DNA from: Mizuhopecten yessoensis
Taxonomy: Eukaryota
Assembly (NCBI RefSeq): GCF_002113885.1
Contig: NW_018404492.1
Coordinates: 3,097,109 to 3,161,108 of the forward strand
DNA length: 64,000 nucleotides
Direction: 5' to 3'
This document shows, one piece after another, positions 24,607 to 61,900 of the stretch. Position 1 is the stretch's first letter. Every line of letters begins with the position of its first letter. The translations under genes and the position numbers were made by a program. Below the pieces are notes generated by a model. The model saw only the letters and a program-made list of their open reading frames with translations, was not told the DNA's origin and searched no databases.

Positions 24607-27201
24607 ATGGAATCTCAAGATTCAATTGGCGAGCTACTTACACATGCCATAGATTTTGCCAATGTCATGAGCAACTCAGTGGATAGCATTTATCGGCCCA
24701 TTGCAGAGGAAGCCGTTGCCTATGGCAAGCGTCTCAATGTGGATGTGGTGAAATGTGGCAGTCATGCTGAGCGTTTGTATCTCCCCTACTTCAGCAGAGC
24801 GAACGATGATGCAATATGGGCGATTGACGCCAGTACAGATATAGATATGATGTTTGTGTTTGAAAACTATCATGTAGTTTCAGACGTGGAAAAATCACAT
24901 ATGAAAACTGACATCATTCAATATCAATTAGTGGAAGCAGCCCATCCAGGGTACTTCTTCATAATTCCTTCAAAAGATCTGTCTAGCGAGGACGTTACAA
25001 AACTTACAGTGTCACAGGTCCAGAATATTGCGTTATCGAGTGAAACGTTGAAGAGGCAATTAGAAGAATCTATCAAGCACAGCAGGAAAGGGGCAATCAA
25101 TCTTATATTTATGGAAACACCGACTCTGAATGGACCATCGGTTACCTTCGAGTCTCGTATGAACAGTGGAGTAATGGTTTCAATTGACTGCGTCTTCGGT
25201 GTGAAATGCTCATCGTGGCCAAAACAGCTGGACAACTTCTTCACTAGGGAAAGACATTGTGAATGGCCATGCGTCACACTACTGGGAGAAATTAGAGAAC
25301 AGGGGTGTCATCTGGTGGCTACCGGGGCACACGGCAGCTGCTTACGCCCCTTCGAGTGGAGATTATCGTCAACAAGGGCAGAGAAAATGTTAGCATGGTC
25401 TTTATCAGAAAAACAACGCCTTGCATATCAGATTGCAAAGTCGTTGATCAAATCACACGACAAGACGAAATGTATCGCATCCTACTACGTTAAGACGGCT
25501 CTTTTCTGGCTTTGTGAAGAACGTCAGCAAAGCGTCTGGACGGCATCCTCAAATCTTGAGAATATAAAATGCATACTGGAAAAAATATTTCATTTCTTTG
25601 CCAACAAAAATGTTCCAAACTATTTTGTAGAAGAAAACAATCTTGTCGACCACTTTGAAGACGAGATATTCGTGCATGCTATTGAGGGTCTTGTGGAGCT
25701 GAATGAAATGTTACTACCCAGACTTGCACAACTTTTACAACGCGTGTCAGTTATGCCAGTGGAGTTTCAGCAAACCCCAGCAGAAATGATTACATCGGAA
25801 AATTCAAAAGCGTTACTTGAGTATTTGTGTGTTAACTTTTGTTTTGGAAGTATAGCTCACACAATTTTATCTCAGATAGAAAACAAAACGCATGTCAACT
25901 ATTTGTACTTGGCTGAAACTATGTTCAAACATCTGACAAGTTCATCACACGTCGAACAAATTGACACAACTGTGAAACACGCAACAAATGAGCGTTTATC
26001 GTGCCAAGAGGTAAACAAGGACCAGACGCAAGACGTGTTATTGAACAAGATGTGGTCTCTATCAAGGTCAGGCTTACATTCTGCATGCAGTCTTCTAGAA
26101 AATATAATCCAATACTTCCAGTCAAAGGAATCCGACATGGAAATAATTTGGAAACTTTGTGTAGAACTGGAAAATATTGCAGCTACCCTTTTGAATGGTT
26201 ATTGTCAGCCACAAAATGCAGGAACAACTGTTGTAAATGACTGTATTTATTTGCTGGACAGAAGCGCGCATCTGCATCATGAGTATGCCTTCACATACAC
26301 ACAGAAATATTGGAAACAGTATCCTCGATATCGTATAGAACCAACAAATAATCCAAACAAACTCTCATTTTATTTCTTGGAAATGTGGATAATATTGCTT
26401 ATCAAATATCAACGAGAGGGTAACTGCCAATTTGGGATCATAGGTCGAGGGAACAAAGACAACATGCGACTTCCAATCTGTGTTCGACGACTGGTGGATT
26501 TCATGCTTTTCTATGACAATGATAAAACATGGGTTCTTTTGCAGATCGATTCAGCCTTGTTTGGTGGGAAACCAATTGCGAACTCCCTAAAGATAAAATG
26601 TATTCAGCATTCATCTACAAACTTGAAAATGGACGGGTTAATCAATTTAACAAAACTGAAAATTCGTGCGAAAGCATACAGGACGGACGTAGAAAAGGGC
26701 CACCTGCAGGTGGAACTTGGCAAACTGTGTTGCATCAAAGGAAAACAGTGCAACTACTCAGAGGACCAATCTAAATGGCACAGCCGGTCTCAGGAATATT
26801 TCAGAGATGCTCTCAGTTCTTGCCCCTCGGACATATCAGTGAAAGTTGATTTTGCGGCTTTTTTGTTTACAACCAACCGTAATAATGAAAGCATTGGCCT
26901 TCTTCAAGACGTCTTCACATGTGCAGGGGAAGGAACCACTGTGAATACGTACAATATCAACACATACCGTACCCTCCCTGAAGGGTTACAAGAACTCGTA
27001 GGCAACAAATTCCCAATAGTCATACCATCACTTTTGATCGGGTGCTACTACATTCTTGCAACTTACAAAACTATAAAGATGTCACGAGATCATTCTTTAT
27101 TTGGCAAAATAGTGGCTTGTCTAAAGGATGCAGTTTCTTCAAGTGACGAGGATACTCGGAAGCTAGGGCAGCACATAATTACAGCTTTCTTATCTCACTA
27201 A
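24607..27201 (+). CDS. Mab-21/cGAS-like receptor (cGLR-family nucleotidyltransferase) with long helical/TPR-like C-terminus, 864 aa
   Basis: Uninterrupted ORF. NTase motifs KCGSHAE...TDIDMMF and SIDCVFG. Mab-21 motifs GCHLVA, EWRLSSTRAEKML, SYYVKTALFWLCE, VPNYFVEENNL. TPR-like helices at ~aa 700-780. Probable short 5'UTR intron 24438-24491; AATAAA at 27433. Confidence 0.92.
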   Translation: MESQDSIGELLTHAIDFANVMSNSVDSIYRPIAEEAVAYGKRLNVDVVKCGSHAERLYLPYFSRANDDAIWAIDASTDIDMMFVFENYHVVSDVEKSHMKTDIIQYQLVEAAHPGYFFIIPSKDLSSEDVTKLTVSQVQNIALSSETLKRQLEESIKHSRKGAINLIFMETPTLNGPSVTFESRMNSGVMVSIDCVFGVKCSSWPKQLDNFFTRERHCEWPCVTLLGEIREQGCHLVATGAHGSCLRPFEWRLSSTRAEKMLAWSLSEKQRLAYQIAKSLIKSHDKTKCIASYYVKTALFWLCEERQQSVWTASSNLENIKCILEKIFHFFANKNVPNYFVEENNLVDHFEDEIFVHAIEGLVELNEMLLPRLAQLLQRVSVMPVEFQQTPAEMITSENSKALLEYLCVNFCFGSIAHTILSQIENKTHVNYLYLAETMFKHLTSSSHVEQIDTTVKHATNERLSCQEVNKDQTQDVLLNKMWSLSRSGLHSACSLLENIIQYFQSKESDMEIIWKLCVELENIAATLLNGYCQPQNAGTTVVNDCIYLLDRSAHLHHEYAFTYTQKYWKQYPRYRIEPTNNPNKLSFYFLEMWIILLIKYQREGNCQFGIIGRGNKDNMRLPICVRRLVDFMLFYDNDKTWVLLQIDSALFGGKPIANSLKIKCIQHSSTNLKMDGLINLTKLKIRAKAYRTDVEKGHLQVELGKLCCIKGKQCNYSEDQSKWHSRSQEYFRDALSSCPSDISVKVDFAAFLFTTNRNNESIGLLQDVFTCAGEGTTVNTYNINTYRTLPEGLQELVGNKFPIVIPSLLIGCYYILATYKTIKMSRDHSLFGKIVACLKDAVSSSDEDTRKLGQHIITAFLSH

Positions 27202-27549
27202 ACTCTATATCTGTATGTTTATTTTCATATAACAGCAAATATGACGCTCCCGAACTAACCTTACTAAATGGCATCTTTCCGTATAATTTTGACTACCATA
27301 AGCAGATCCGATATGCGTTTCTTATTTAAAATGCATGTATCTCTTTTATAAACAAAGAAAAACAAAAAGATACAAAGGCTTTCCTACTGGAAACTCTGAA
27401 CACCAGTGAATAATACTTTAACTGTTTTTTAGAATAAAGGTTAAGCTAAATAGAAAAATTGTCGAACCTATACTGGAACTTGACTACTTCTGAAGTGATT
27501 ACGGAGAATGTATTTGTACAAATGTTTAAATGACCCAAAGTTGCACGTC

Positions 27550-28155
27550 TATACTTCAATAGCGTTCAGTAAATGATAGGTAGCTCGTTTCGTCCCTGGT
27601 CCCTGCTGAGGGAATATTAGCCCCTTCCAATTCAATAACATACCTGGCGTTTAGCATGTTAGAGAGAGCAGAGTTCCCTATATTCTGTCCTACCTGCATT
27701 CCAAGACTTTGGCTGCAAGGGCACTCTGTGGCACATAGACTCCACACATCTGTACAGGCTATTATGTAAAGCTTTTGAAATTTCCCCTGAAGTTTTGTCT
27801 TTGGGTACTTCAAGTTTAGAAAATTAGATCTGAGGCAGTTCTGTGCTTTTAATGTACTGCTAACCCCAGTTGTTGTAAATCCTCATTAGACCTTAAGAAC
27901 TGACTGTCCGTAACGAATGGTTATAATGGAGCATTGACTGATCATCTAACACACCTCCGAGACCGGTAATTGGTCGGATTGTGTTGAAATGTTTCAATGT
28001 CTGAAAGGCCCTTTCCTCGTGGTCTTAGATCATAAGAGATTGATGTATTCACTGATGTTCTATATCCTTCATTGTGATGGTATGGCTCTGTGTAGTAGCG
28101 CTCTTACGGTACTTTTCTTGTGTTGCAGCCGATGATGGTAGTCGAATATTAATAT
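27550..28155 (-). mobile_element. Penelope-like retroelement remnant (RT thumb plus decayed GIY-YIG endonuclease)
   Basis: Minus strand LIFDYHHRLQHKKSTVRALLHRA, followed by YPKTK...LYIIACTD...NSALS. Confidence 0.65.
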
Positions 28156-28576
28156 AAGACACAGACATAAATATGCGAGGCTGTAGTCTATTTAAATGGG
28201 TATTTTGGAATATATAATTTGTTCACAGAAAATAACCAAAAACGTAAGCAATAACAATTAATAAAAACATATAAAACAATTTCAATATATCTTTATTATA
28301 ACAACCTTTATATAAATATATATTTGAATATAAATATTTTAACACAAGTTCACAGTTGATATGATAGATAATGTTAATTTACGAATTCATTTTCATCAGG
28401 ATACATTCCATTATTTGTGGGATGCGTAAACGTTTGAGTTATGTATTCTTAATATCTCAGTTCTACATTTAACATCTAATTTTAAATAATACAGGTAAGA
28501 CAATTTTTAACATTCTTTTTTGAGAAAAAATCGAATAGACGAATCCTCATATGGTTTAATATAATATATATTTGTT

Positions 28577-28697
28577 TCATTTGCTGTTGAAATATTTCAT
28601 ATGTTGATCCGGATCGACCTGGTTCACAATAAGGCCTTCGCCATTATTGTCGGTGTCGTTTAAAAGCTTGAAGAGTGCTTCTGTCATCACATCGGTA
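28577..28697 (-). CDS. HPGD: 15-hydroxyprostaglandin dehydrogenase-like SDR, exon 7 (terminal)
   Basis: ttgtctttcag|T ACC GAT...; TDVMTEALFKLLNDTDNNGEGLIVNQVDPDQHMKYFNSK-TGA; minus-strand AATAAA at ~28292-28297. Confidence 0.85.
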
Positions 28698-29172
28698 CTG
28701 AAAGACAAAATAAAAAAGTTACAATAAGTTTACTGTGTCTTCCCCTTTTAATTTGAACGTTATAAATTACAAATACCAGACCGTAAATTCGTGGGATACA
28801 CATGGGCATATCACTGATAATACAAAGGAGTCTCGATAAAGTGGCTGAAGTAGGAGATGACTGGACCCTTGGTACAATATACCTAAAGAAAATATGGACA
28901 TGTTCTTTTAAACACCCGATGTATAAAGGATTAACGGAGTTACGGATAGTTGTGACCGAGGTTAGGAATATTGACCGAGGAATGGATAGTGGTTACTGAA
29001 GTTATGAATCACATTTTTTGTTATTTTGATGCTATAATTAAATGCACGCCAATATATGTAAAAATAAAAAAAAAACATTGTACCTTTCTTTGTTTTTATC
29101 TATAAAGAGTTTTTTTCTCAAATAAATGTGGTTACAAACAATATGTGGAAATGAAATGGTGGCTGTCCCTAC

Positions 29173-51799: not shown

Positions 51800-53050
51800 A
51801 GTAAATCTACTCTTACTAAATACTCGTCAAATTTATTTAAACAAATTTAAGTCTTTAAAAACATCAAGTTATATGAATGCATAACCACGGACTTTATCCA
51901 ATTCCGTGTACAATATCTAATTTGAACATAAACTTAGTCCCGTGCAATTGAATAGATTCTTGATATATGAAATCCATTTAAAATCAGCGAAATCATTTTC
52001 ATGTAATGCATAAGCTTGTACATTATACTAGACAATTTATTTTCACCTGTAATTAGTTTATACCAAAACATTATCATTCTAGATTTAATTTCATTATTCA
52101 GAGGGTACTTAACCGTTTCACCATATACCATTATATTATATTTGCTGTGGAGCTTCGTATGTTTAAAATTCTTTTACAAAACTGTACATGTAATTTCTCA
52201 ATCATATTGGTATTTTTAAACACCAAAATTACAAATGGATTGGGGATAATAAAATATCAAACAATTTTAATTGTAGGTCAATTGGTAAAATAATATTTCT
52301 ATTTTTTTTATATAATGCATACATTGCTTTTTGAGCCTGTTCAACAAGTTTTTTTCTTGCTTTACAGAAACTGCCATTAAAATGAAACAGCAGTCCTAGA
52401 AACGAGTAGCTTTCATGTGTTTGCAACTCTTCACCAAAAAGAGTAAAACGAAAATTGTGTGCAATTACATTTCCTTTTTTCAAAGATAACAACTTTACTT
52501 TTATTGAGATTAACTTTAAGTTTCCAAATAATACAGTAAGTTTCAAATTCACGGAAAGCATTCTGTAGACCTTTAGCTGTTTCTGACATAACAACTGTGT
52601 CATCTGCATATGTAGCAGAATAAATAATTTAACAAATATACCCATGCGTTCTTGAAATAAATTGTCAATATACTGGAGTTGGTCAACTTTACTTTGCATG
52701 AAAAAATCTTCTAAATCATTTAAATATATTGAGAACAAAAATGGGGAGAGATTTTCACCTTGTTTTACCCCGACGTGACAAGTGAAAAAATCAGTCATAC
52801 CATTGCTAGATTTTACGCAAGTATTAGTGTTTGCATACAGATTAATTATAGCATTAAATATATTTCCTGTGATATAATTCTTTGATAATTTCTTCCATAA
52901 ACCTACCCTCCAAACAGTGTCAAACGTTTTTCTGAAATCAATGAATGAACAGAATAGCTTTTTATTTTTTGAAAAGTATATAGATATTAAAGCATGAAGG
53001 ATAAATATATTTTTAGTTGTAGAGTAGCCTTTCCTAAAACCAGCTAGAAC
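51800..53050 (-). mobile_element. Non-LTR retrotransposon RT fragment, frameshifted
   Basis: FIDFRKTFDTVWRVGLW, GVKQGENLSPFLFSIYLNDL, frameshifted YADD, YSFLG, MVYGE. Confidence 0.88.
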
Positions 53051-54863: not shown

Positions 54864-55046
54864 CTGCTTCCACTAATTGATATTGACTGATGTCAGAGTC
54901 TGTTTCCATATGTGAGTTTTCCACGTCTGAAACTACATGAAAGTTTTCAAACACAAACATCATATATATATCTGTACTGGCGTCAATCGCCAAAATTGCA
55001 TCATCGTTCGCTCTGCTGAAGTAGGGAGGATACAAACGCTCAGCAT
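54864..55046 (-). pseudogene. Truncated, internally deleted copy of the cGLR 5' coding region
   Basis: AERLYPPYFSRANDDAILAIDASTDIYMMFV...QYQLVEA matches cGLR aa ~54-111. Start codon and GS motif are deleted, DID is changed to DIY, and the rest of the gene is absent. Confidence 0.9.
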
Positions 55047-55835
55047 TTCTTATTTTCTGGATGCTTGTTGTGATCAAAATATCCAATTTTCACAGCTGCT
55101 GTATTTATTACATACATCGAGCAGTCGAGAAAAAATACAAAGGCTTTTCATTAAAATACAATTTGTACACAGTAATCTAAATACGACTTGCAAAAACAAG
55201 CACATCATGATAACAGCAAAATGTTACGAGGAAAATATTGGTGAAATTATTTTCATATTACGTTTATGAAAAAACAGCATGTATTATTTTCCGAGTTTAA
55301 GTATACATTAACTCTAAATATCTATTGGATACTTTGTTCACAACTCACTGATTGAAATAGCAAACTAAGTGGGACACACTGTAGACATAGAGTAACAAAT
55401 GAGATTGCATAAGTAAAATGGATACGGGAAGTTTGAGAGTGCGGTTGTGAATCCGCTGTTAAATCATTTAATATAGCTTTCTTTGGCATTTACAGGTCAG
55501 ATTCCACATGGCTAATGACGTATCGAGTCCATTAAACAATGAGAATATGCATGTATGCATTTTCCATCATTGTAATCGTGATACAGTGTATTTCATTTAG
55601 TCTACTATGGTACTTTAATACTGGTCTATAAAGGATCCATGCCATGCAGGCAACTTTTCTTCTATCACCACCTTGCTCTTCCTTTTTGGTGTTACCCCCC
55701 ACCCCCACACCACACCACCCCCACTCCCACCCAAAAAAAAGTATCTGAGGCTACGTCACACTCCTATCATCAAGCCTATTTATTATGCTGGATAGTACGT
55801 TTTGCGTAAGTCTACATTTTCCTACTTTGAATGTA

Positions 55836-57011
55836 CAGTTGGGAGCAAACTTAACTTGATATATAGTGCACTTTGTAGTGCAAACGTAGTGAACAAGGAA
55901 CTGCACTTGACAAAAACATTGAAGTGCACTCCAGTTTACTTAAGTGTTAACTCCAGTTCACTTAAATGTTACTCCAGTTCACTTCAGTGTTAGCTCCAGT
56001 GCACTACAGTGTTTACCAAAGTTTAAAAGACTGAAGTACATATTTCAATAATTGTTTATAATGAAAAGGGTTTCTTTGTGATATGAAAATTGAAAGAGAA
56101 AAGAAAGAATCATTCAACTGAATATTTCATAATATCGAATCAACGATACACATGTATTTTTTCTATTGCTTAAAATTTCAACTGAACATGTACATGTACA
56201 AAAAAGGAATGTGTACACTATCTCTGGTGATTATAGAAAATTTATAGATAGCTGTACTATTTCAAATGAAAAAGTTTAAAAGTATCATAGTAAGTTAAAT
56301 CACATTTCATATCAATGTTGTAGTGTCAGGATAGGGGATCAGTATCTGTTATGTGATATGGGTAAATGTGGTCAGTTTTCCTATAATTTTATACTTTTTA
56401 TGAAAGGTTTTTCTATAACACAACATCAATAGAGTAATTCGCTTATTTATTTTATATAAACAAGTCAAGAAAATATAAAATGTAAAACAAAAGCTTATAT
56501 CATGGCATGGACTATATAGATAAAAGGTAAATATCAAGCTAAAGATGTGTAATTAATCTAAGTTTGTTAATCCAAAGTTGCCTGAAGAAAAAATCTTTGA
56601 GTTAGTCTGATTTTGATATATTCTTTGTTATATATATATACACATCAGGTACATGTACATGCTGATGGTTGACTAAGAAAATACATCCCAAACCACCACC
56701 CCCTCCCCTGGTCTACTGTGTTCCCCTCACCAGTGTAGCAGGTATACAGCTGGCCTGGTGGTATTGTAATGCATTGCCACTTGTTAAAGTGATGATAAAA
56801 GTCATGGTTGCAGGGTGCAAGCACCTGTAGGTAAAGTTATATATATATGTACAAAAATGAAATAAGTTGATTGATTTACTAATAAAAAAAAACCAAATCA
56901 ATTAAGTTTCACAGGGAACTTCAAGTTTTAATCATACAGTTACAACTTTACTTCAGTGGCAGATTTAAAGATTGTTACCAGGGCAATGTAACCACCCCCT
57001 GACACATATTG

Positions 57012-57042
<31 letters not shown>

Positions 57043-58908
57043 TCACTGTTCTGTTCTTTATTTGCCAAAAGCCCTTATGCTTATAGGTACATACAAATAA
57101 ACATATAACATTCTCTAAACATAATTAGAATAGGCAGGAGAGTGACATCAAAGTATACATAAAACACCGTTCAATAATGTGCATATAACAATACTTAATT
57201 TAACGAATTACAATAATGGAACACCACAATACATAAACATTAAATTAACACCTCTTAAAAGCTAAATATAAATATTTTCCTAAATTGGATAGCTCTCTAA
57301 CATTATTATCTATATGGTATCTACCTGAGAATATATTGGCAATGATCACCCACTGACCATTCACCTGCGGTCACATGGGATTCTGATGGGCTGAACACCT
57401 TGTGTTAAGGCAATTAATTTTGTCAATTTATCCAGCCCATTGTTTGTCCAGTAGATACATAGGTAAATCAGTACACGATTACAGGTAAGATACTGTGGCT
57501 ACCCCTTTGTCCAGAAATGACAGCCTCGGGCACAATTCTATTTCAATACAGTGCCTTTGAAGTGTTTCACGCTACCTTATCCCTCAAATGGTTTACAAAC
57601 TGGGTGTTACATAAATAGTCAACACTAGTTGAAAACACACCCCAGCATCAATTAATTGGTCACTGAAACATGATAGAGCCTTTTTGTACATGTACGTTCA
57701 GGTTCCATAGTAGCCACAGGGCACACTGATGTTACAATAAAAGAACCAAAAGGTCACTTAGGAAATTAAAATTTTGAAAAAATCAAGATAAATCGGTAAG
57801 GATTATGAGAAGGTTCGATCTTACCTTTTTAAAACACACTCAAATCTGTTCTTTAAAAAAATATCCAAGGTCTTGGAGTTGTTAACATTATAGTTCATTT
57901 ATCTTTTTTTTTAAAACAGAATTACATACACACACATATATACATCACTATGGTATTTTTTATGCATAAATCATCTATTCTTTGGATAGGTGATCTGACA
58001 AAACCATTAGGTGTTTATTTTGATTGGATTATACACGTTTTTAATTTTTAGACATATTCAAAGTTAATTCTTATAATTTATTTTCATTGTTGACATGTAG
58101 TTAAATGTATTTTCTTACTAGAAACACAGACTTATAGAGAATCTAGTTTCGTACTAGAAAACTACACACTTCCTAGAATCAATATTATTTGTTTTTTAGT
58201 GGGGTTTTTTAAGAAAGTCTAAGTTTACTTGATAACTTGATTTACAAAGAGAGAAATGAAAAAAATAAGACAATTTTCTCCTGTGCTAGCTTCACGGTTC
58301 AGCGGGTGAAATTTACCTGTGGAAAAGTCAATTTGGATACCTACATATTTAATTCTTAACAAATAAATGTTGTGTTGTAATTCAGATCTTCATTCCTGTA
58401 ACTACAGTACATCATGAATGAGACAATACATATATTCATAGTATTTGTTCTTATTCACCTACATGAGCTCTCCATTTTTCTTCTTCAAAAAGAATATGCA
58501 GAAAAAGACTCACTATCATATACTGATAATATAATGCTATATTTGTATACTTAATGTAGACGTAATACTAGCACTGTGCTACTTATAAAGGAACTTCAAC
58601 GGTGATTATGTCTTTTATGTCTATTAACTTTAAACCACCAATACATGTATATATATGTACCATGGGTCCAAGTCGGTGCATGTACTAATAATCATATAGG
58701 TCATCACGCTCTATAGTTATTATGCTATTTTCCTAAAAGGATACTAAGAAAATTACCTTGTGAACGGTAGTTAACTCCAGTGGACATTGATGTGAACTCC
58801 AGTTAATTATTTCAGTGTTAACTCCAGTTCACAAGCTAGTGAGTTGGAGTTCACTTTTCTTGTTAACTCCAGTGCACTAGGCAATCAAGTTAAGTTTGCT
58901 GCCAGCTG
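55836..58908. mobile_element. Longer mirror copy of the Tc1/mariner-like non-autonomous element
   Basis: TA|CAGTTGGGAGCAAACTTAACTTGAT ... ATCAAGTTAAGTTTGCTGCCAGCTG|TA; ~0.9 kb longer than the left-arm copy. Confidence 0.72.
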
Positions 58909-61900
58909 TACAGCCACTGCATTGCTTTATAAATACTATAATCCTCGTCGAGACGTTCCCCAATACAGAAACACATCACCGGACATTTCATTGGCATTAC
59001 ATAACGATATTCTGATTACCGCTTTATTAAGCACCCTTTGTAAACAGTATACATCCCCTAACTCGACATGTGAATTAAACACTCACTAAACAAGAAGTAT
59101 ATAAAATATTTATCCCGTTCCATGACGTTATAATACAAAATGTTCAACACGCAGATGTGAACAATGCTTTATTCGTATTCATTGATCCCTGCCGGCTATC
59201 AAAACGTCTGCCATGAACACCCTATTCTCACATATTATGGTTAACCATGTACTGTCTGAAATTAATCTGACAGCAAGTTTATATTATATGTGAAATAGCC
59301 GAACTAACAAGTCAATACGGAATGAGGTTTACAATGTCCACCTCATTATGTGTCATCTGATTCCACCATTTTAAAAATCATGATTCGTCAGCAGCCTCCT
59401 CGTAAATGTTGGCAAGATTATGGTACGTCATCATACCGCAAAACAGTACACACTCAGACAAATTACATATGGGTGTTTCTGTTACAAAGCGGCTAGCACA
59501 TATGTGGTTCGTATATTAGTGAGTTCATTTCATATGATATTTTATGAAACGAGTCTTAGGAGTTTTTATTTTTGCGAGCCTTTGGGAGCAAACATTAAAT
59601 CTTCTAGACGAGTTTCATAAAATCTCATATGGAATGTAAACAAATCTAAGATACTTTTTATCACATAACTCAGAAAACTTACATTTTGACGGGTTTTAAA
59701 GCCAAATTGTAGAGGGCTTAATCAAACGGAGACAGCCATTTTGTTGCGCCATTCACAATTTATGAGGTCACGTCATTGTCCATATTATGACGTCACAATC
59801 GATTTCTGACTGGCACAGCCAATGAAAAACGCTCCAGGGTATATTACACTAGTGACATATGTAAAAATATTACACGGGCTAATTCACTGGATAACAGGCC
59901 GATTATATGATAAACATATATATCTATATTGTTAAAGCGTCCTACCCACAACCGCCCACCACTCACGTTTCTCTTTCAACAGTAGTGTAAAGCAATTTGA
60001 ACGTTGATCTTTTCTGTCTCTGGCACCACCAAGGAGTCACCGACAGAACGTAACATTTGTATTGTGCATGCAATTCATGGAATAATGCTTTTATTACAAA
60101 ATTTATTTTTGAAGATGCAATCATCAGAGTGTAACTTATGATCATTCTCTTGCGGAGAACTTTTTGAAGGGAATGATGTACATTAACCTGGATTGTTTTG
60201 TTAGGAAATGCATCTTTTGAATTATTACGGGAAGGGTAACTATAAAAAGTAAACTCTGTCAAGGATTTATTACTATAATAAGAAAAAAACTTACATGAAA
60301 TCCTCGCTACATCTAAATAATAGTGGAAAGCTGTTTTCATGTACTTTATGAAAGCATGATTGAATTCATGGACGACTCCGCGCTCTCGGAATCATGCGAC
60401 TGATTGTTTTTTCTTAGGGACTGTAATTTATTCATGTACATGCAGACAGACAGTCATATTCTTTATTTCCTCCATATAGAGATTACATGTCTTACATGCG
60501 TGAACTGCTACAATAATAAATTCGTTTCAATTATAGAAAACATTGTAAATAAATGTCATATTGTTATGTTATTAACACTGCAGATTATTTACATACTACA
60601 TTGTCAGTACAACTGACCTCTCCGAAATTGAGATTCACTTCCCAAGACAAATGATAACTTCAGAAAGCATGTGCTCTACACAGCGTGCGACTCCGATGAT
60701 GCAGTTCTCTCTTTCATCATCATCTTTTTCCATCACCATTCTACTACCTACGAGAAACAGGTACTGATCGTCTTCTTCCAACAAATCAAATTTGACATAA
60801 TCAGTAACCTTTAGCGTATTTAAAACATGCTCTGTAAGCTTATCCCTACTGCTACTTGCTTATGTACCTATCATGTTTTATGGCTTTTTATAACAAGATG
60901 TGTATATCGGTACCCTATTGTGATTTATGTTAAATCATGAAGGGCACTAACCAGATGTGGATATATGGCTTAATTCACACAGGGAATCAAATAACTTGTG
61001 ATGTTTGTGAAGTGCTATCAGCCTCGTGCATGGTATGTGTATTTGTACAAGTACGTTGTATGGCGCGTTCATTGAATATCATCACGGACATAACCCAGTG
61101 TGGTGTATATATTATATATCTCCTTGCATCTCTATTTGTCATAATTGAAAGCACAACAAAACATTACATCAAGATTAGGAATAGCTACCATTAAAGGCGG
61201 TATTTATTATTATTGACATATAAAAGTAACGTATGAACCATAAAGTAAGTTTGCACAAAAATATGATAATACCTAAAACTATCTTCATTCATATAAATGA
61301 GTATAGTGAATGGGGTCCAATCACAAATTGTTATAACCGCCTTTGTTCCAATATACAAACAATATGTATACAAAAGGCAACGTCACATTAGTTAGAATAT
61401 AAACATTGTGATGTTAACTCATGTTAAAGGTCATAAACAAACAAAACAGTTAGTAATCACATACTCTTACCTGTACAATATAACATAGTTAGAAAGGTAT
61501 TTTACAACTTGAACCAAATTTGTTTTATTGACTTTAATCTCAGACCACCCATCAAAGTCATGGAAAGCTTATTTTTATAAGTATAAGCATGTTTTCAAAT
61601 TTTATAACAATCCATGACCACGTTTGATGTGAAATCACAATAATGAACATGATACACAATTTAAGAAATCCTGTCCCACTGGATTTTTTCCCGTATGCAC
61701 AGTTAGTAACCTCCCTTCAGCTGCCGTTTGGGTATAACTACATGTATAGCACGGTTGGGTTAGGATACTTCCATTGACCAGGTAGCTCAATAGCTTAGAG
61801 CGAAAGTATAATAATCTCATGTGACCCAGTGTTCGAAACCCGGTCTAGCTCCGCTGAACTTTTGTTACTTCTTTAAACACTTTGTTGTTTTGGTGGTTTT

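What the first reader, a model, noticed from the sequence alone, without database searches (positions are those of the whole stretch)
24607..27201. Intact cGAS-like receptor with an atypical active-site insert and a ~500-aa helical/TPR-like extension
Seen: the GS motif and DxD are separated by ~25 residues; the third Asp (SIDCV) is present; after the Mab-21 core (~aa 350) comes a long helical region ending in TPR-like repeats. Knowledge: the usual spacing is G[GS]x9-13[DE]h[DE]; cGLRs make cyclic dinucleotides for STING and are strongly expanded in bivalves. Inference: a likely active innate-immune sensor whose ligand may be read by the C-terminal solenoid and whose product could be non-canonical.
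Basis: partly seen in the sequence, partly recalled or inferred. Interest (0 to 1): 0.75.

Follow-up and report, generated by a model that had tools for sequence, protein, structure and literature searches.

The report
Scallop cGAS-like enzyme with helical tail
A scallop gene encodes a cGAS-type immune-signalling enzyme that keeps its catalytic residues, carries an unusually long loop beside the active site and a 500-residue helical tail, and is closest to an acidic coral enzyme group whose trigger is unknown.

Summary
Window 24607-27201 (+) is an intact 864-aa ORF. RNA-library contigs show it spliced: two alternative non-coding first exons join one coding exon. Residues 1-365 model as a full cGAS fold (Z 28.8 to mouse cGAS; best Foldseek hit Sp-cGLR1). 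G51/S52, D78/D80 and D194 are invariant in all 24 aligned relatives. S52 and D78 are 25 residues apart, against 10 in 15 of 22 paralog ORFs from this genome; the extra residues model as a low-confidence loop. The protein fails the published cGLR motif on three counts (C for Q/T, X25, X111).

New here: the gene is not part of the main scallop radiation (112 Mab-21 matches). It groups (95/91 support) with anthozoan proteins that RefSeq names "cGAS-like receptor 2". Those share the acidic enzyme domain (pI 5.6 here), a lengthened loop and a ~340-aa helical extension. Scallops add a basic TPR-like tail. The acidity argues against dsDNA/dsRNA sensing on the usual surface.

A rearranged, broken duplicate lies nearby. 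Catalysis, ligand and product are untested. The scan noted other cGLR genes elsewhere in this genome, but not this one. I rate it a new variant of a known kind, of moderate interest.

The parts
21006..21035 (+). 3' end of alternative non-coding first exon 1a (start not mapped; the contig carried 171 letters upstream of the splice)
   Evidence: The loose end of RNA-library contigs at 24492 (X7, X15) maps exactly here. GTAAGT donor at 21036.
21555..21586 (+). 3' end of alternative non-coding first exon 1b, built of short 'GTGCACTGGAGTT..' repeats
   Evidence: The loose end at 24490 (X1, X15) maps to 21555-21584. The next two bases, AG, are shared with the acceptor. GTAAGT donor at 21587.
24492..28148 (+). 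Single large coding exon (5'UTR 24492-24606, CDS, 3'UTR to about 28148)
   Evidence: Polypyrimidine tract plus AG at 24490-24491. Contigs of X7 (RNA-Seq) and X1 tile 24490/24492 to ~28148 with no internal joints, and there is no coverage at 23676-24451.
24507..24545 (+). Short upstream ORF (12 codons plus stop) in the 5'UTR, out of frame with the CDS
   Evidence: Read directly from the sequence.
24607..27201 (+). CDS, 864 aa plus stop
   Evidence: Full-length orthologs of 858-861 aa in three other scallop genera share the same N-terminus.
24607..25668 (+). Mab-21/cGAS-fold nucleotidyltransferase domain (aa 1-354): spine helix 4-42, NTase core, helix bundle
   Evidence: AF2 model pLDDT 82, pTM 0.83. 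VIA Z 28.8, rmsd 2.7 A over 312 residues to mouse cGAS, model range 5-365. Foldseek 8gjy Sp-cGLR1 E 3e-16. phmmer 8gjy E 4.8e-16.
24757..24762 (+). G51-S52 of the NTase motif, preceded by C50 instead of the usual Q/T
   Evidence: G51 is invariant and S52 at least 90% conserved in 24 sequences. The motif sits right after strand 46-50 in the model.
24763..24837 (+). 25-residue GS-to-DxD spacer (aa 53-77), including the ~15-residue insert; acidic, modelled as a low-confidence loop
   Evidence: Spacing table. pLDDT below 50 at residues 62-65 and 69-74, coil from 55 to 76. 14 of 25 positions invariant in 4 scallops. pI 4.66.
24838..24846 (+). D78-I-D80, first two catalytic acids, at the start of strand 77-91
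   Evidence: Invariant in 24 of 24 aligned sequences. Strand assignment.
25186..25188 (+). D194, third catalytic acid, on strand 191-201
   Evidence: Invariant. The family profile aligns this strand to 'ISVDITLAL' of human cGAS. It aligns to the D in 'ysvDltlgik' of Sp-cGLR1.
25423..25665 (+). Pfam Mab-21_C (HhH/H2TH-like) match, aa 273-353, with K278 and S292-Y293-x-x-K296-T297
   Evidence: E 9.9e-12, 45.3 bits against a cut-off of 24.1. These motifs align to cGAS 'MKYLL' and 'SSYHVKT'.
25669..26568 (+). Middle helical extension (aa 355-654), fold unresolved, as conserved among scallops as the enzyme core
   Evidence: Predicted helices but pLDDT below 50. 169 of 300 positions invariant in 4 scallops. 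Colinear with the whole anthozoan-type extension: hhalign 74%, E 2.7e-5, columns 3-346 against 3-331.
26569..27198 (+). TPR-like tail (aa 655-864), basic (pI 8.96), faster evolving
   Evidence: pLDDT 80-93 from about aa 685. VIA Z 10-12 to TPR domains over model 301-510. Weak phmmer hits to TPR proteins. Tail profile hits the C-termini of other long-loop Mab-21 proteins (E 7e-9 to 3e-6) and L026 (4.5e-5). 65 of 210 positions invariant in 4 scallops.
27010..27066 (+). Hydrophobic segment aa 802-820 (FPIVIPSLLIGCYYILATY) inside the tail
   Evidence: Kyte-Doolittle 19-aa mean of 1.67; 1.82-1.91 at the same place in the 3 orthologs. Modelled as a strand plus a TPR helix. Membrane insertion not tested.
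54864..61891 (-). Inverted copy of the gene's upstream region, 5'UTR exon 1a and codons 53-111; it lacks 24403-24763 (start codon to codon 52). This is the 5' half of a broken duplicate.
   Evidence: blastn 92-96% identity to 18017-24940. Exon 1a copy at 59309-59338. The 3' half (codons ~108-864, three frames, 2 TGA) lies outside the window at G000:C1165:3188988-3191228.

Best explanation
This is a functional, transcribed scallop gene. It has two alternative non-coding first exons and one coding exon, and encodes an 864-aa three-part protein. Part 1 (aa 1-354) is a complete cGAS/Mab-21-fold nucleotidyltransferase. It keeps the GS motif, the three metal-binding acids and the nucleotide-pocket motifs, so it is most likely catalytically competent (inferred). 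Its surface is acidic, and a 25-residue acidic loop lies between GS and DxD, the position of cGAS's activation loop (recalled). This loop probably gates the active site (inferred). Part 2 (aa 355-~690) is a helical domain shared with anthozoan 'cGAS-like receptor 2'-type proteins, the sister clade. Part 3 (aa ~655-864) is a basic TPR-like module, also found at the C-terminus of other long-loop Mab-21 proteins. The most likely mechanism, all inferred: the helical and TPR-like parts bind a protein or another non-nucleic-acid ligand, or hold the enzyme autoinhibited. Binding repositions the loop and switches on synthesis of a cyclic dinucleotide. That signal is read by one of the STING proteins the genome encodes. 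The confidence given is for this mechanism as a whole; the descriptive part (identity, fold, clade, architecture, transcription) I hold at about 0.9.
For: Intact gene: 864-aa ORF. Full-length orthologs at 62-69% identity in Pecten, Ylistrum and Argopecten. Spliced RNA-library contigs with a canonical acceptor and GTAAGT donors. Fold: pLDDT 82; Z 28.8 and rmsd 2.7 A over 312 residues to cGAS; Foldseek E 3e-16 to Sp-cGLR1. Catalytic residues: G51, D78, D80, D194 invariant in 24 of 24 sequences and S52, E55, R252, S254, S292, Y293 at least 90% conserved. WRLS, K278 and SYxxKT align to cGAS. DSSP puts D78/D80 and D194 on strands. Clade: careful IQ-TREE groups the 4 scallop proteins with 16 anthozoan-type proteins at UFBoot 95 / SH-aLRT 91, apart from 16 of the 18 own-genome paralogs in the tree; the other two, L023 and L025, fall on the long-loop side. 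RefSeq names Montipora and Acropora members 'cyclic GMP-AMP synthase-like receptor 2'. Shared traits: the 'GSxxExLxLP' signature, a 17-21 residue loop, N-domain pI 4.75-5.49 in 11 members, and a ~340-aa extension. Extension homology: hhalign 74% / E 2.7e-5 to the anthozoan extension; tail 96.7% / E 3e-10 to the P0053 group. Constraint: the middle extension is 56% invariant among 4 scallops, the same as the core. Acidic domain, with Li et al. stating that acidic cGLRs (Pd-cGLR, Sp-cGLR2) are active with unknown, probably non-nucleic-acid ligands and that Sp-cGLR2 makes 2'3'-cGAMP (passages). STING_LBD exons are present in the genome: 7 matches over the cut-off.
Against: The protein fails the published cGLR active-site motif as written: C50 instead of Q/T, X25 instead of X8-20, and X111 instead of X50-90. 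No activity, ligand or product has been tested for it or, to my knowledge, for any ortholog. The link between the RefSeq name 'cGLR2' and the biochemically active Sp-cGLR2 is my inference; I never saw the Sp-cGLR2 sequence. No coordinates were available, so the geometry of the three Asp was not measured. The middle domain is modelled at pLDDT below 50, and its homology to the anthozoan extension is only moderately supported. TPR matches at Z 10-12 are within the range helical repeats often reach by chance (note), and no Pfam TPR model hits. Expression looks low: mean word depth 6-10 in contigs, and 0 of 36 laid reads of the raw RNA run X23 fall on the gene (19% of that run read). In RNA-library contigs of other individuals, 5 of 6 coding variants are amino-acid changes, 4 of them in the tail and 1 (E522A) in the middle extension; this could mean relaxed constraint there. 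Pfam's Mab-21 NTase model (PF03281) does not hit the window protein itself at E <= 1; it hits only the orthologs.
Confidence: 0.5

Rival explanations
1. Pseudo-enzyme or scaffold. The Mab-21 domain no longer makes a nucleotide signal (like Mab21L1 and similar family members). It serves as a structural platform, and the helical/TPR-like part recruits partners.
For: It fails the curated motif on three counts. The pre-GS residue is Cys in all 4 scallop orthologs. A long, low-confidence loop sits at the mouth of the active site. PF03281 does not hit the window protein. MB21D2 and Mab21L1 are among the matched structures. A crustacean study reports Mab21 proteins acting outside the nucleic-acid-sensing paradigm (PMC12928593; title and start of the abstract as shown in the search listing only).
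Against: All three acids, GS, E55 and the pocket motifs (WRLS, K278, SYxxKT) are kept across scallops and anthozoan-type relatives at 24% identity. That is hard to explain without catalysis or at least nucleotide/metal binding.
Confidence: 0.25
2. Nucleic-acid sensor. dsRNA or dsDNA activates the enzyme, perhaps through the basic TPR-like tail in the manner of IFIT proteins rather than through the usual back-face groove.
For: The tail is basic (pI 8.96). IFIT5, an RNA-binding TPR protein, is among the Foldseek matches (E 6e-3 to 9e-3). The best solved sequence and fold match of the core is the dsRNA-activated Sp-cGLR1 (activity from passages).
Against: The enzyme domain has pI 5.59 and net charge -11, and this is conserved in the orthologs. 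Nucleic-acid-sensing cGLRs are reported at pI > 8.5. The IFIT5 matches are weak (TM 0.16-0.18) and no better than dozens of unrelated TPR proteins.
Confidence: 0.12
3. A decaying or non-functional lineage-specific gene copy whose ORF is open only by chance or recency.
For: A neighbouring duplicate is clearly broken. Expression is low and absent from one raw RNA run. 5 of 6 coding variants are non-synonymous.
Against: The 2.6-kb ORF is intact in four scallop genera at 62-69% protein identity with no frame disruption. It has a spliced mRNA. No variants were listed in the Mab-21 part in contigs of X7 and X1.
Confidence: 0.03

Closest known systems
Anthozoan 'cyclic GMP-AMP synthase-like receptor 2' proteins (RefSeq names in Montipora and Acropora; presumably named after Sp-cGLR2 of Li et al. 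2023)
   Same: Sister clade in the tree (95/91). Acidic Mab-21 domain. 'GSxxExLxLP' signature with a lengthened GS-DxD loop. A ~340-aa helical extension colinear with residues 357-700 here.
   Different: Only 24% identity. The loop is 17-21 residues, not 25. The pre-GS residue is T (or A/S/Q), not C. There is no TPR-like tail: the proteins end near residue 712 of the scallop protein. Whether the biochemically tested Sp-cGLR2 belongs to this clade was not verified.
Sp-cGLR1 (PDB 8gjy) and Cv-cGLR1 (8gjw), characterised cGLRs; vertebrate cGAS
   Same: Same fold over the whole catalytic domain (Z 28.8 to cGAS; E 3e-16 to 8gjy). Same catalytic triad positions and pocket motifs.
   Different: By the paper's account those are basic, nucleic-acid-activated enzymes; the solved chains are 355-376 residues. 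Here the domain is acidic, has a 25-residue spacer (the canonical spacer in this genome's paralogs is 10; cGAS about 11 is recalled) and carries 510 extra residues.
Main bivalve Mab-21 radiation (about 650-790-aa single-ORF genes; 112 matches in this genome; mussel and pearl-oyster relatives)
   Same: Mab-21 plus Mab-21_C domains followed by a ~330-aa helical extension with a TPR-like end. The family profile hits consensus-TPR proteins at E 1.2e-6, and there are weak Pfam TPR hits in L009 and L016.
   Different: Canonical 10-residue spacer. Separate side of the tree. Their extension shows no detectable similarity to the one here (hhalign probability 0.5% or less).
cGLR-TPR / cGLR-ANK fusions mentioned by Li et al. 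2023
   Same: A cGLR core with an appended repeat module thought to mediate protein or ligand interaction (passages).
   Different: Those were called from conserved-domain annotation. Here no Pfam TPR model hits, and most of the extension is an unannotated helical domain. I could not see Table S2, so overlap with their list is unknown.
Human MB21D2 (PDB 7lt1), orphan cGLR
   Same: Significant sequence and fold match (E 3.7e-12; E 9.3e-14). An orphan with no known ligand (passage).
   Different: No long C-terminal extension in the solved chain. Not the nearest clade.

Membership tests
cGLR as curated by Li et al. 2023 (PMC9980059) | Active-site motif h[QT]GS [X8-20] [DE]h[DE]h [X50-90] h[DE]h | tested here: not met
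   The sequence reads K-C-G-S, X25, D-I-D-M, X111, I-D-C. The regex does not match it (criteria quoted). All catalytic residues themselves are present. Only 2 of 29 family members I tested match the regex, so the whole scallop family strains the X50-90 term.
cGLR as curated by Li et al. 2023 | Sequence homology across both the NTase core and the C-terminal helix bundle | tested here: met
   phmmer to 8gjy covers 173-352 (E 4.8e-16). Mab-21_C E 9.9e-12. The family profile hits 8gjy at 3.5e-37 and cGAS at 8e-24. Orthologs hit PF03281.
cGLR as curated by Li et al. 2023 | [quoted passage not shown] | tested here: met
   Z 28.8, rmsd 2.7 A over 312 aligned residues to mouse cGAS. Foldseek E 3e-16, TM 0.66-0.70 to Sp-cGLR1.
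cGLR (functional definition) | [quoted passage not shown] | not testable with these tools
   Needs biochemistry. Only the presence of STING_LBD exons in the genome was shown.
Mab-21 superfamily (Pfam) | Hits to PF20266 (Mab-21_C) and PF03281 (Mab-21 NTase) above the gathering score | tested here: inconclusive
   PF20266 is met (45.3 bits against 24.1). PF03281 gives no hit at E <= 1 for the window protein, but is met in the ortholog P0002 (38.8 bits) and in P0005/P0006.
Anthozoan-type 'cGLR2-like' long-loop clade | Monophyly with those proteins, plus shared acidic core, loop signature and extension | tested here: met
   UFBoot 95 / SH-aLRT 91 for the 20-row clade. pI, loop and extension lengths. 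Extension colinearity is only moderately supported (74%, E 2.7e-5). The scallop stem branch is long (1.44).
TPR repeat proteins | Recognisable 34-residue helix-turn-helix repeats (Pfam TPR clan hit) forming a solenoid | tested here: inconclusive
   No Pfam TPR hit at E <= 1. The structure matches are homogeneous TPR at Z 10-12. phmmer hits to TPR-rich proteins at E 7e-6 to 9e-4. Atlas leads are TPR with TM below 0.5.

The most novel reading that the evidence does not exclude
Scallop and anthozoan proteins together define an ancient (pre-bilaterian) branch of cGAS-like receptors. In this branch the enzyme is acidic, its activation loop is lengthened, and a dedicated ~340-aa helical domain, so far unannotated, is permanently fused to it. 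That built-in receptor or autoinhibitory module would sense a non-nucleic-acid (probably protein or cationic) ligand. Scallops stretched the loop further and carry a TPR-like tail (added, or retained where anthozoans lost it), creating a new input. If the coral enzyme Sp-cGLR2 belongs to this branch, the extension is the missing clue to its 'unknown ligand'.
Probability: 0.3. Interest if true: 0.75.

Novelty: new variant of a known kind. Interest (0 to 1): 0.5.

Why it matters
Non-nucleic-acid ligands of cGAS-like receptors are an open question; Li et al. state that acidic, apparently auto-active cGLRs must sense something unknown. This gene offers a concrete handle. It belongs to a conserved acidic cGLR lineage present in corals and scallops, and it comes with its own conserved helical domain, an extended loop at the position of the activation loop, and in scallops a TPR-like tail. 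Truncation, loop-swap and pull-down experiments on these proteins could identify the ligand or partner. It also shows that motif-based curation (X8-20, X50-90, [QT]GS) can exclude proteins that keep every catalytic residue. For scallop aquaculture immunology it adds a candidate sensor outside the large canonical radiation.

Tried and rejected
I used per-region protein conservation among 4 scallops instead.

2. Sequence-level link between this extension and that of the main bivalve radiation: hhalign found nothing (probability 0.5% or less). I rejected the idea that all bivalve Mab-21 extensions are demonstrably one domain; structure might still unite them.

3. Wider homologs: the full protein and its 6-row profile found only 7 proteins. 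The exhaustive search with the 504-aa extension found only the ortholog cluster plus 3 weak TPR proteins. These searches are word-prefiltered or length-limited, so absence elsewhere in molluscs is not shown.

4. Fold of the middle domain: the AF2 run with a 6-row alignment gave pLDDT below 50 for residues 355-~675. Both prediction jobs are used, so it stays unresolved. Atlas matches (TTC7B-like, TM 0.45 or less) are leads only.

5. TTCNNNGAA gives 19 against 20.8 expected. No support here.

6. Literature: searches 'cGLR' + 'scallop' (2 papers, both irrelevant by title and abstract), 'Sp-cGLR2/cGLR2/cGAS-like receptor 2' (22 papers, nothing beyond Li et al. on the coral enzyme by the listing) and 'cGLR/bivalve/Mab21' (26 papers). 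I therefore found no paper in this library on this gene or on the extension. Of Li et al. (PMC9980059) I read only passages through find mode. Its Tables S1-S4 (the list of cGLRs, fused domains, tested constructs, pI) were not seen and could show that an ortholog is already listed or was tested.

7. Asp convergence: no coordinates are returned, so this is judged only from strand assignment and alignments.

8. Human cGAS residue numbers and the term 'activation loop' are recalled, not taken from a call.


Full report
OBSERVATION. Window 24607-27201 (+) holds one uninterrupted 864-aa ORF, by far the longest in the 64-kb window. Pfam finds Mab-21_C at residues 273-353 (E 9.9e-12) and nothing else credible. 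phmmer against solved structures gives 'cGAS-like receptor 1' 8gjy (E 4.8e-16, residues 173-352), MB21D2 (3.7e-12) and two further Mab-21 entries. G51-S52 is followed by 25 residues and then D78-I-D80, and D194 sits in 'VSIDCVFGV'.

THE GENE IS REAL AND TRANSCRIBED. Full-length proteins of 858-861 aa with the same N-terminus exist in Pecten maximus (69% identity), Ylistrum balloti (68%) and Argopecten irradians (62%). The window therefore comes from a scallop (Pectinidae).

Nineteen runs from 10 studies hold at least half of the gene's sampled words; one of them is on record as RNA. I laid four runs on 22900-28700. Contigs of X7 (RNA-Seq) and X1 (RNA by guess) tile 24490/24492 to about 28148. 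They leave 23676-24451 empty and show no joints inside the ORF. At 24490/24492 the contigs continue upstream into letters that do not fit the genome there.

Those letters map exactly to 21006-21035 and 21555-21584. Each site is followed by a GTAAGT donor, and 24480-24491 is a polypyrimidine tract ending in AG. So the mRNA has two alternative non-coding first exons and one coding exon. That exon carries a 115-nt leader with a 12-codon uORF (24507-24545) and a 3'UTR of about 950 nt.

Expression looks low: word depth is 6-10. The one raw-read RNA run (X23, 19% read) put all 36 laid reads on a repeat at 23288-23675 and none on the gene.

THE ENZYME DOMAIN. An AlphaFold2 model of residues 1-365, built on 24 family sequences, has mean pLDDT 82 and pTM 0.83. 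It contains a spine helix (4-42), strand 46-50, the GS motif, a coil at 55-76 with pLDDT below 50, strand 77-91 carrying D78/D80, and strand 191-201 carrying D194.

Foldseek ranks Sp-cGLR1 first (8gjy, E 3e-16, TM 0.66-0.70), followed by dozens of cGAS entries, Cv-cGLR1 and MB21D2. VIA-align gives Z 28.8 and rmsd 2.7 A over 312 residues to mouse cGAS-ATP, covering model residues 5-365.

In the 24-row alignment, G51, D78, D80, G176, P177, D194, W220, P221, C234, V237, K278, K296 and E304 are invariant. S52, E55, W251, R252, S254, S292, Y293 and T297 are at least 90% conserved. The family profile aligns the D194 strand to 'ISVDITLAL' of human cGAS. It also aligns 'WRLS', 'K-x-L-L' and 'S-Y-x-x-K-T' to 'WRLSFS', 'MKYLL' and 'SSYHVKT'. 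From memory, these cGAS motifs hold D319, R376/S378, K414 and S435/Y436.

The catalytic and nucleotide-pocket residues are thus retained. The tools return no coordinates, so I could not measure whether the three Asp converge.

THE INSERT. I took 22 paralog ORFs from the same genome. Fifteen have exactly 10 residues between GS and DxD ('TGSxAEGhxhxGSDxD'). The window protein and its three orthologs have 25. The flanks of the extra residues ('LPYFS[RK]' and '[AV]ST') are conserved among scallops, and the centre varies. In the 53-77 spacer, 14 of 25 positions are invariant. The segment is acidic (pI 4.66) and is modelled as a disordered loop beside the active site.

Against the published curation motif h[QT]GS[X8-20][DE]h[DE]h[X50-90]h[DE]h (Li et al., passage), the protein fails three times: C50 for Q/T, X25 and X111. 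The last term is also exceeded by nearly all of the scallop paralogs I tested. Only 2 of 29 family sequences match the regex, so that term is a weak discriminator here.

WHERE IT BELONGS. The genome (G000) holds at least 112 Mab-21 matches. By my hand count of the table, 78 of them lie in open frames of 600 aa or more. A Mab-21 core followed by a ~330-aa extension is therefore the common local architecture.

The window gene is not part of that radiation. Its nearest non-scallop relatives, P0005 and P0006 (24-30% local identity; P0005 covers 72% of the query and P0006 36%; E 3.5e-37 and 1e-35), belong to a group of ~700-aa proteins. That group includes Montipora and Acropora proteins that RefSeq names 'cyclic GMP-AMP synthase-like receptor 2', plus Actinia and Oculina proteins.

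A careful IQ-TREE analysis of the Mab-21 domain (55 rows, 397 columns) unites the 4 scallop proteins with 16 such proteins at UFBoot 95 / SH-aLRT 91. The scallop clade itself has 100/100 support. This grouping is separate from 16 of the 18 own-genome paralogs in the tree; the other two, L023 and L025, fall on the long-loop side. The scallop stem is long (1.44).

The clade shares several traits:
- the 'GSxxExLxLP' signature;
- a lengthened spacer of 17-21 residues;
- an acidic core (pI 4.75-5.49 in the 11 anthozoan-type rows, against 5.39-5.76 in scallops);
- an extension of 333-348 residues.

Li et al. report that nucleic-acid-sensing cGLRs have pI above 8.5. They report that acidic ones, naming Pd-cGLR (pI 5.0) and Sp-cGLR2, have negatively charged grooves and unknown, probably non-nucleic-acid ligands, and that Sp-cGLR2 makes 2'3'-cGAMP (passages). 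That the RefSeq name derives from Sp-cGLR2 is my inference; I could not obtain that sequence.

THE EXTENSION. AlphaFold2 on residues 355-864, with a shallow 6-row alignment, predicts helices throughout. It is confident only from about residue 685 onward (pLDDT 80-93).

For that part, a Foldseek-independent scan of 48,161 chains returns almost only TPR domains at Z 10-12 (TTC7B, Sti1/HOP, PP5, p67phox, designed CTPR). Foldseek gives no hit at E <= 0.001, but its top rows are all TPR/ARM solenoids. The exhaustive sequence search with the 504-aa extension finds the ortholog cluster plus three TPR-rich proteins that hit residues 719-794 (E 7e-6 to 9e-4). Atlas leads agree but are weak. No Pfam TPR model hits. 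So 'TPR-like tail' is reasonable but not proven, and Z 10-12 is within the range that helical repeats can reach without kinship (note).

Profile comparison splits the extension into two parts. Columns 3-346 (protein 357-700) are colinear with the entire anthozoan-type extension (probability 74%, E 2.7e-5). Columns 336-483 (protein 690-837) match the C-terminal part of another set of long-loop Mab-21 proteins, the P0053 group (probability 96.7%, E 3.2e-10).

A tail profile hits P0059 (which carries Pfam TPR_2), P0053, P0052, P0054 and P0056 (E 7e-9 to 3e-6), and weakly the own-genome paralog L026. Elsewhere in the genome the tail has only the broken duplicate and one weak match. There is no similarity to the extension of the main bivalve radiation (probability 0.5% or less), although that radiation's scallop and mussel members match each other at 99.7%.

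Among the four scallops, the middle extension is as conserved as the core: 56% invariant, against 54-56%. The tail is less conserved, at 31%. The tail is basic (pI 8.96). It contains a conserved hydrophobic stretch at 802-820 (Kyte-Doolittle 1.67-1.91), which the model treats as a repeat helix.

VARIANTS. Contigs from other individuals show six differences inside the CDS, all in the extension: E522A, N581N, T682I, T771I, G793E and H829Q. Five of the six change the amino acid. Four of these (T682I, T771I, G793E, H829Q) fall in the tail and one (E522A) in the middle extension. None were listed in the Mab-21 part. The sample is small. It fits either relaxed constraint or diversifying selection on the tail.

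MECHANISM (INFERRED). The retained catalytic machinery across a scallop-anthozoan divergence argues for a working nucleotidyltransferase. The acidic core argues against the classical nucleic-acid groove. The long acidic loop sits where cGAS has its activation loop (recalled). The constrained helical domain and the TPR-like tail are the obvious candidates for ligand or partner binding, or for autoinhibition. STING ligand-binding-domain exons are present in the genome, with 7 matches over the cut-off, so a receiver exists.

The rival readings are a pseudo-enzyme scaffold, an IFIT-like RNA-binding tail, and a decaying gene. They are weighed in their own sections.

CONTEXT AND BROKEN DUPLICATE. 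A second copy exists in two pieces. The first piece is an inverted segment at window 54864-61891, which matches 18017-24940 at 92-96% identity. It covers the upstream region, exon 1a and codons 53-111, and has lost 24403-24763, the stretch from the start codon to codon 52. The second piece is a direct segment about 65 kb downstream of the gene, at G000:C1165:3188988-3191228. It covers codons ~108-864 at 91-94% nucleotide identity, is spread over three frames, and has 2 in-frame TGA. The two pieces abut at codons 108-111. This looks like one duplicate later split by a rearrangement, and it cannot encode the GS/DxD part in frame with the rest.

COMPARISON AND NOVELTY. The core fold and family are known, and cGLR fusions to TPR or ankyrin modules are mentioned by Li et al.. 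Three things depart from what I could find in print (searches; passages of one paper only; supplementary tables not seen):
- an acidic, long-loop lineage shared by scallops and anthozoans that carries a conserved, unannotated ~340-aa helical domain;
- a further loop extension and a Cys before GS in scallops, which put the protein outside the published motif while every catalytic residue is kept;
- a TPR-like tail present in addition to the anthozoan-type extension.

I therefore class it as a new variant of a known kind, of moderate interest. The scan had noted other cGLR genes elsewhere in this genome, but not this one.

Noticed in passing
window 54864-61891 (-) and G000:C1165:3188988-3191228 (outside the window; loci L002, L003, L005, L029): A rearranged pseudogene copy of the gene. 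Its 5' flank, exon 1a and codons 53-111 lie inverted inside the window, with the start codon region deleted. Codons ~108-864 lie ~37 kb further on in direct orientation, with frame shifts and 2 TGA. The inverted repeat may extend beyond 18017/61891, because my comparison started at 18000.
   Followed up: partly
window 23436-23615: A short repeat with very high depth in all four runs (word depth 100-120; all 36 laid raw RNA reads of X23 fall in 23288-23675). It shows 'goes back' and 'opposite strands' joints, which looks like an abundant transcribed repeat or hairpin element. Its 'CACTGGAGTTCAC'-type units recur in exon 1b (21460-21586).
   Followed up: no
window 24507-24545: A 12-codon upstream ORF in the 5'UTR of the coding exon, out of frame with the main ORF. 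It may dampen translation.
   Followed up: no
window 27010-27066 (aa 802-820): A conserved hydrophobic 19-mer in the tail that reaches the Kyte-Doolittle threshold for a membrane helix in all four scallop proteins. The AF2 model packs it as a repeat helix. The anthozoan-type P0005 has a different hydrophobic stretch at 511-533, but P0031 does not.
   Followed up: partly
window 19888-19898 and its duplicate at 59967-59977: An ISRE-like GAAAGAGAAAC about 1.1 kb upstream of the end of exon 1a. It is not enriched over chance in the window.
   Followed up: yes
window 42306-43454 (-) and 52229-52798 (-): ORFs that look to me like reverse-transcriptase fragments of non-LTR retroelements (a judgement by eye from the translations; no family search was run).
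   Followed up: no
G000, genome-wide: At least 112 Mab-21 matches. Many lie in tandem clusters on the same contigs (e.g. C5298, C4076, C4871, C5487), and several contain stops. Nearly all the intact ones I examined exceed the X50-90 spacing of the published cGLR motif.
   Followed up: partly
G000:C4063:2281861-2282223 (-), locus L035: The only other genomic match to the TPR-like tail (E 6e-4, 23% identity), inside a 1084-aa open frame. Not examined.
   Followed up: no
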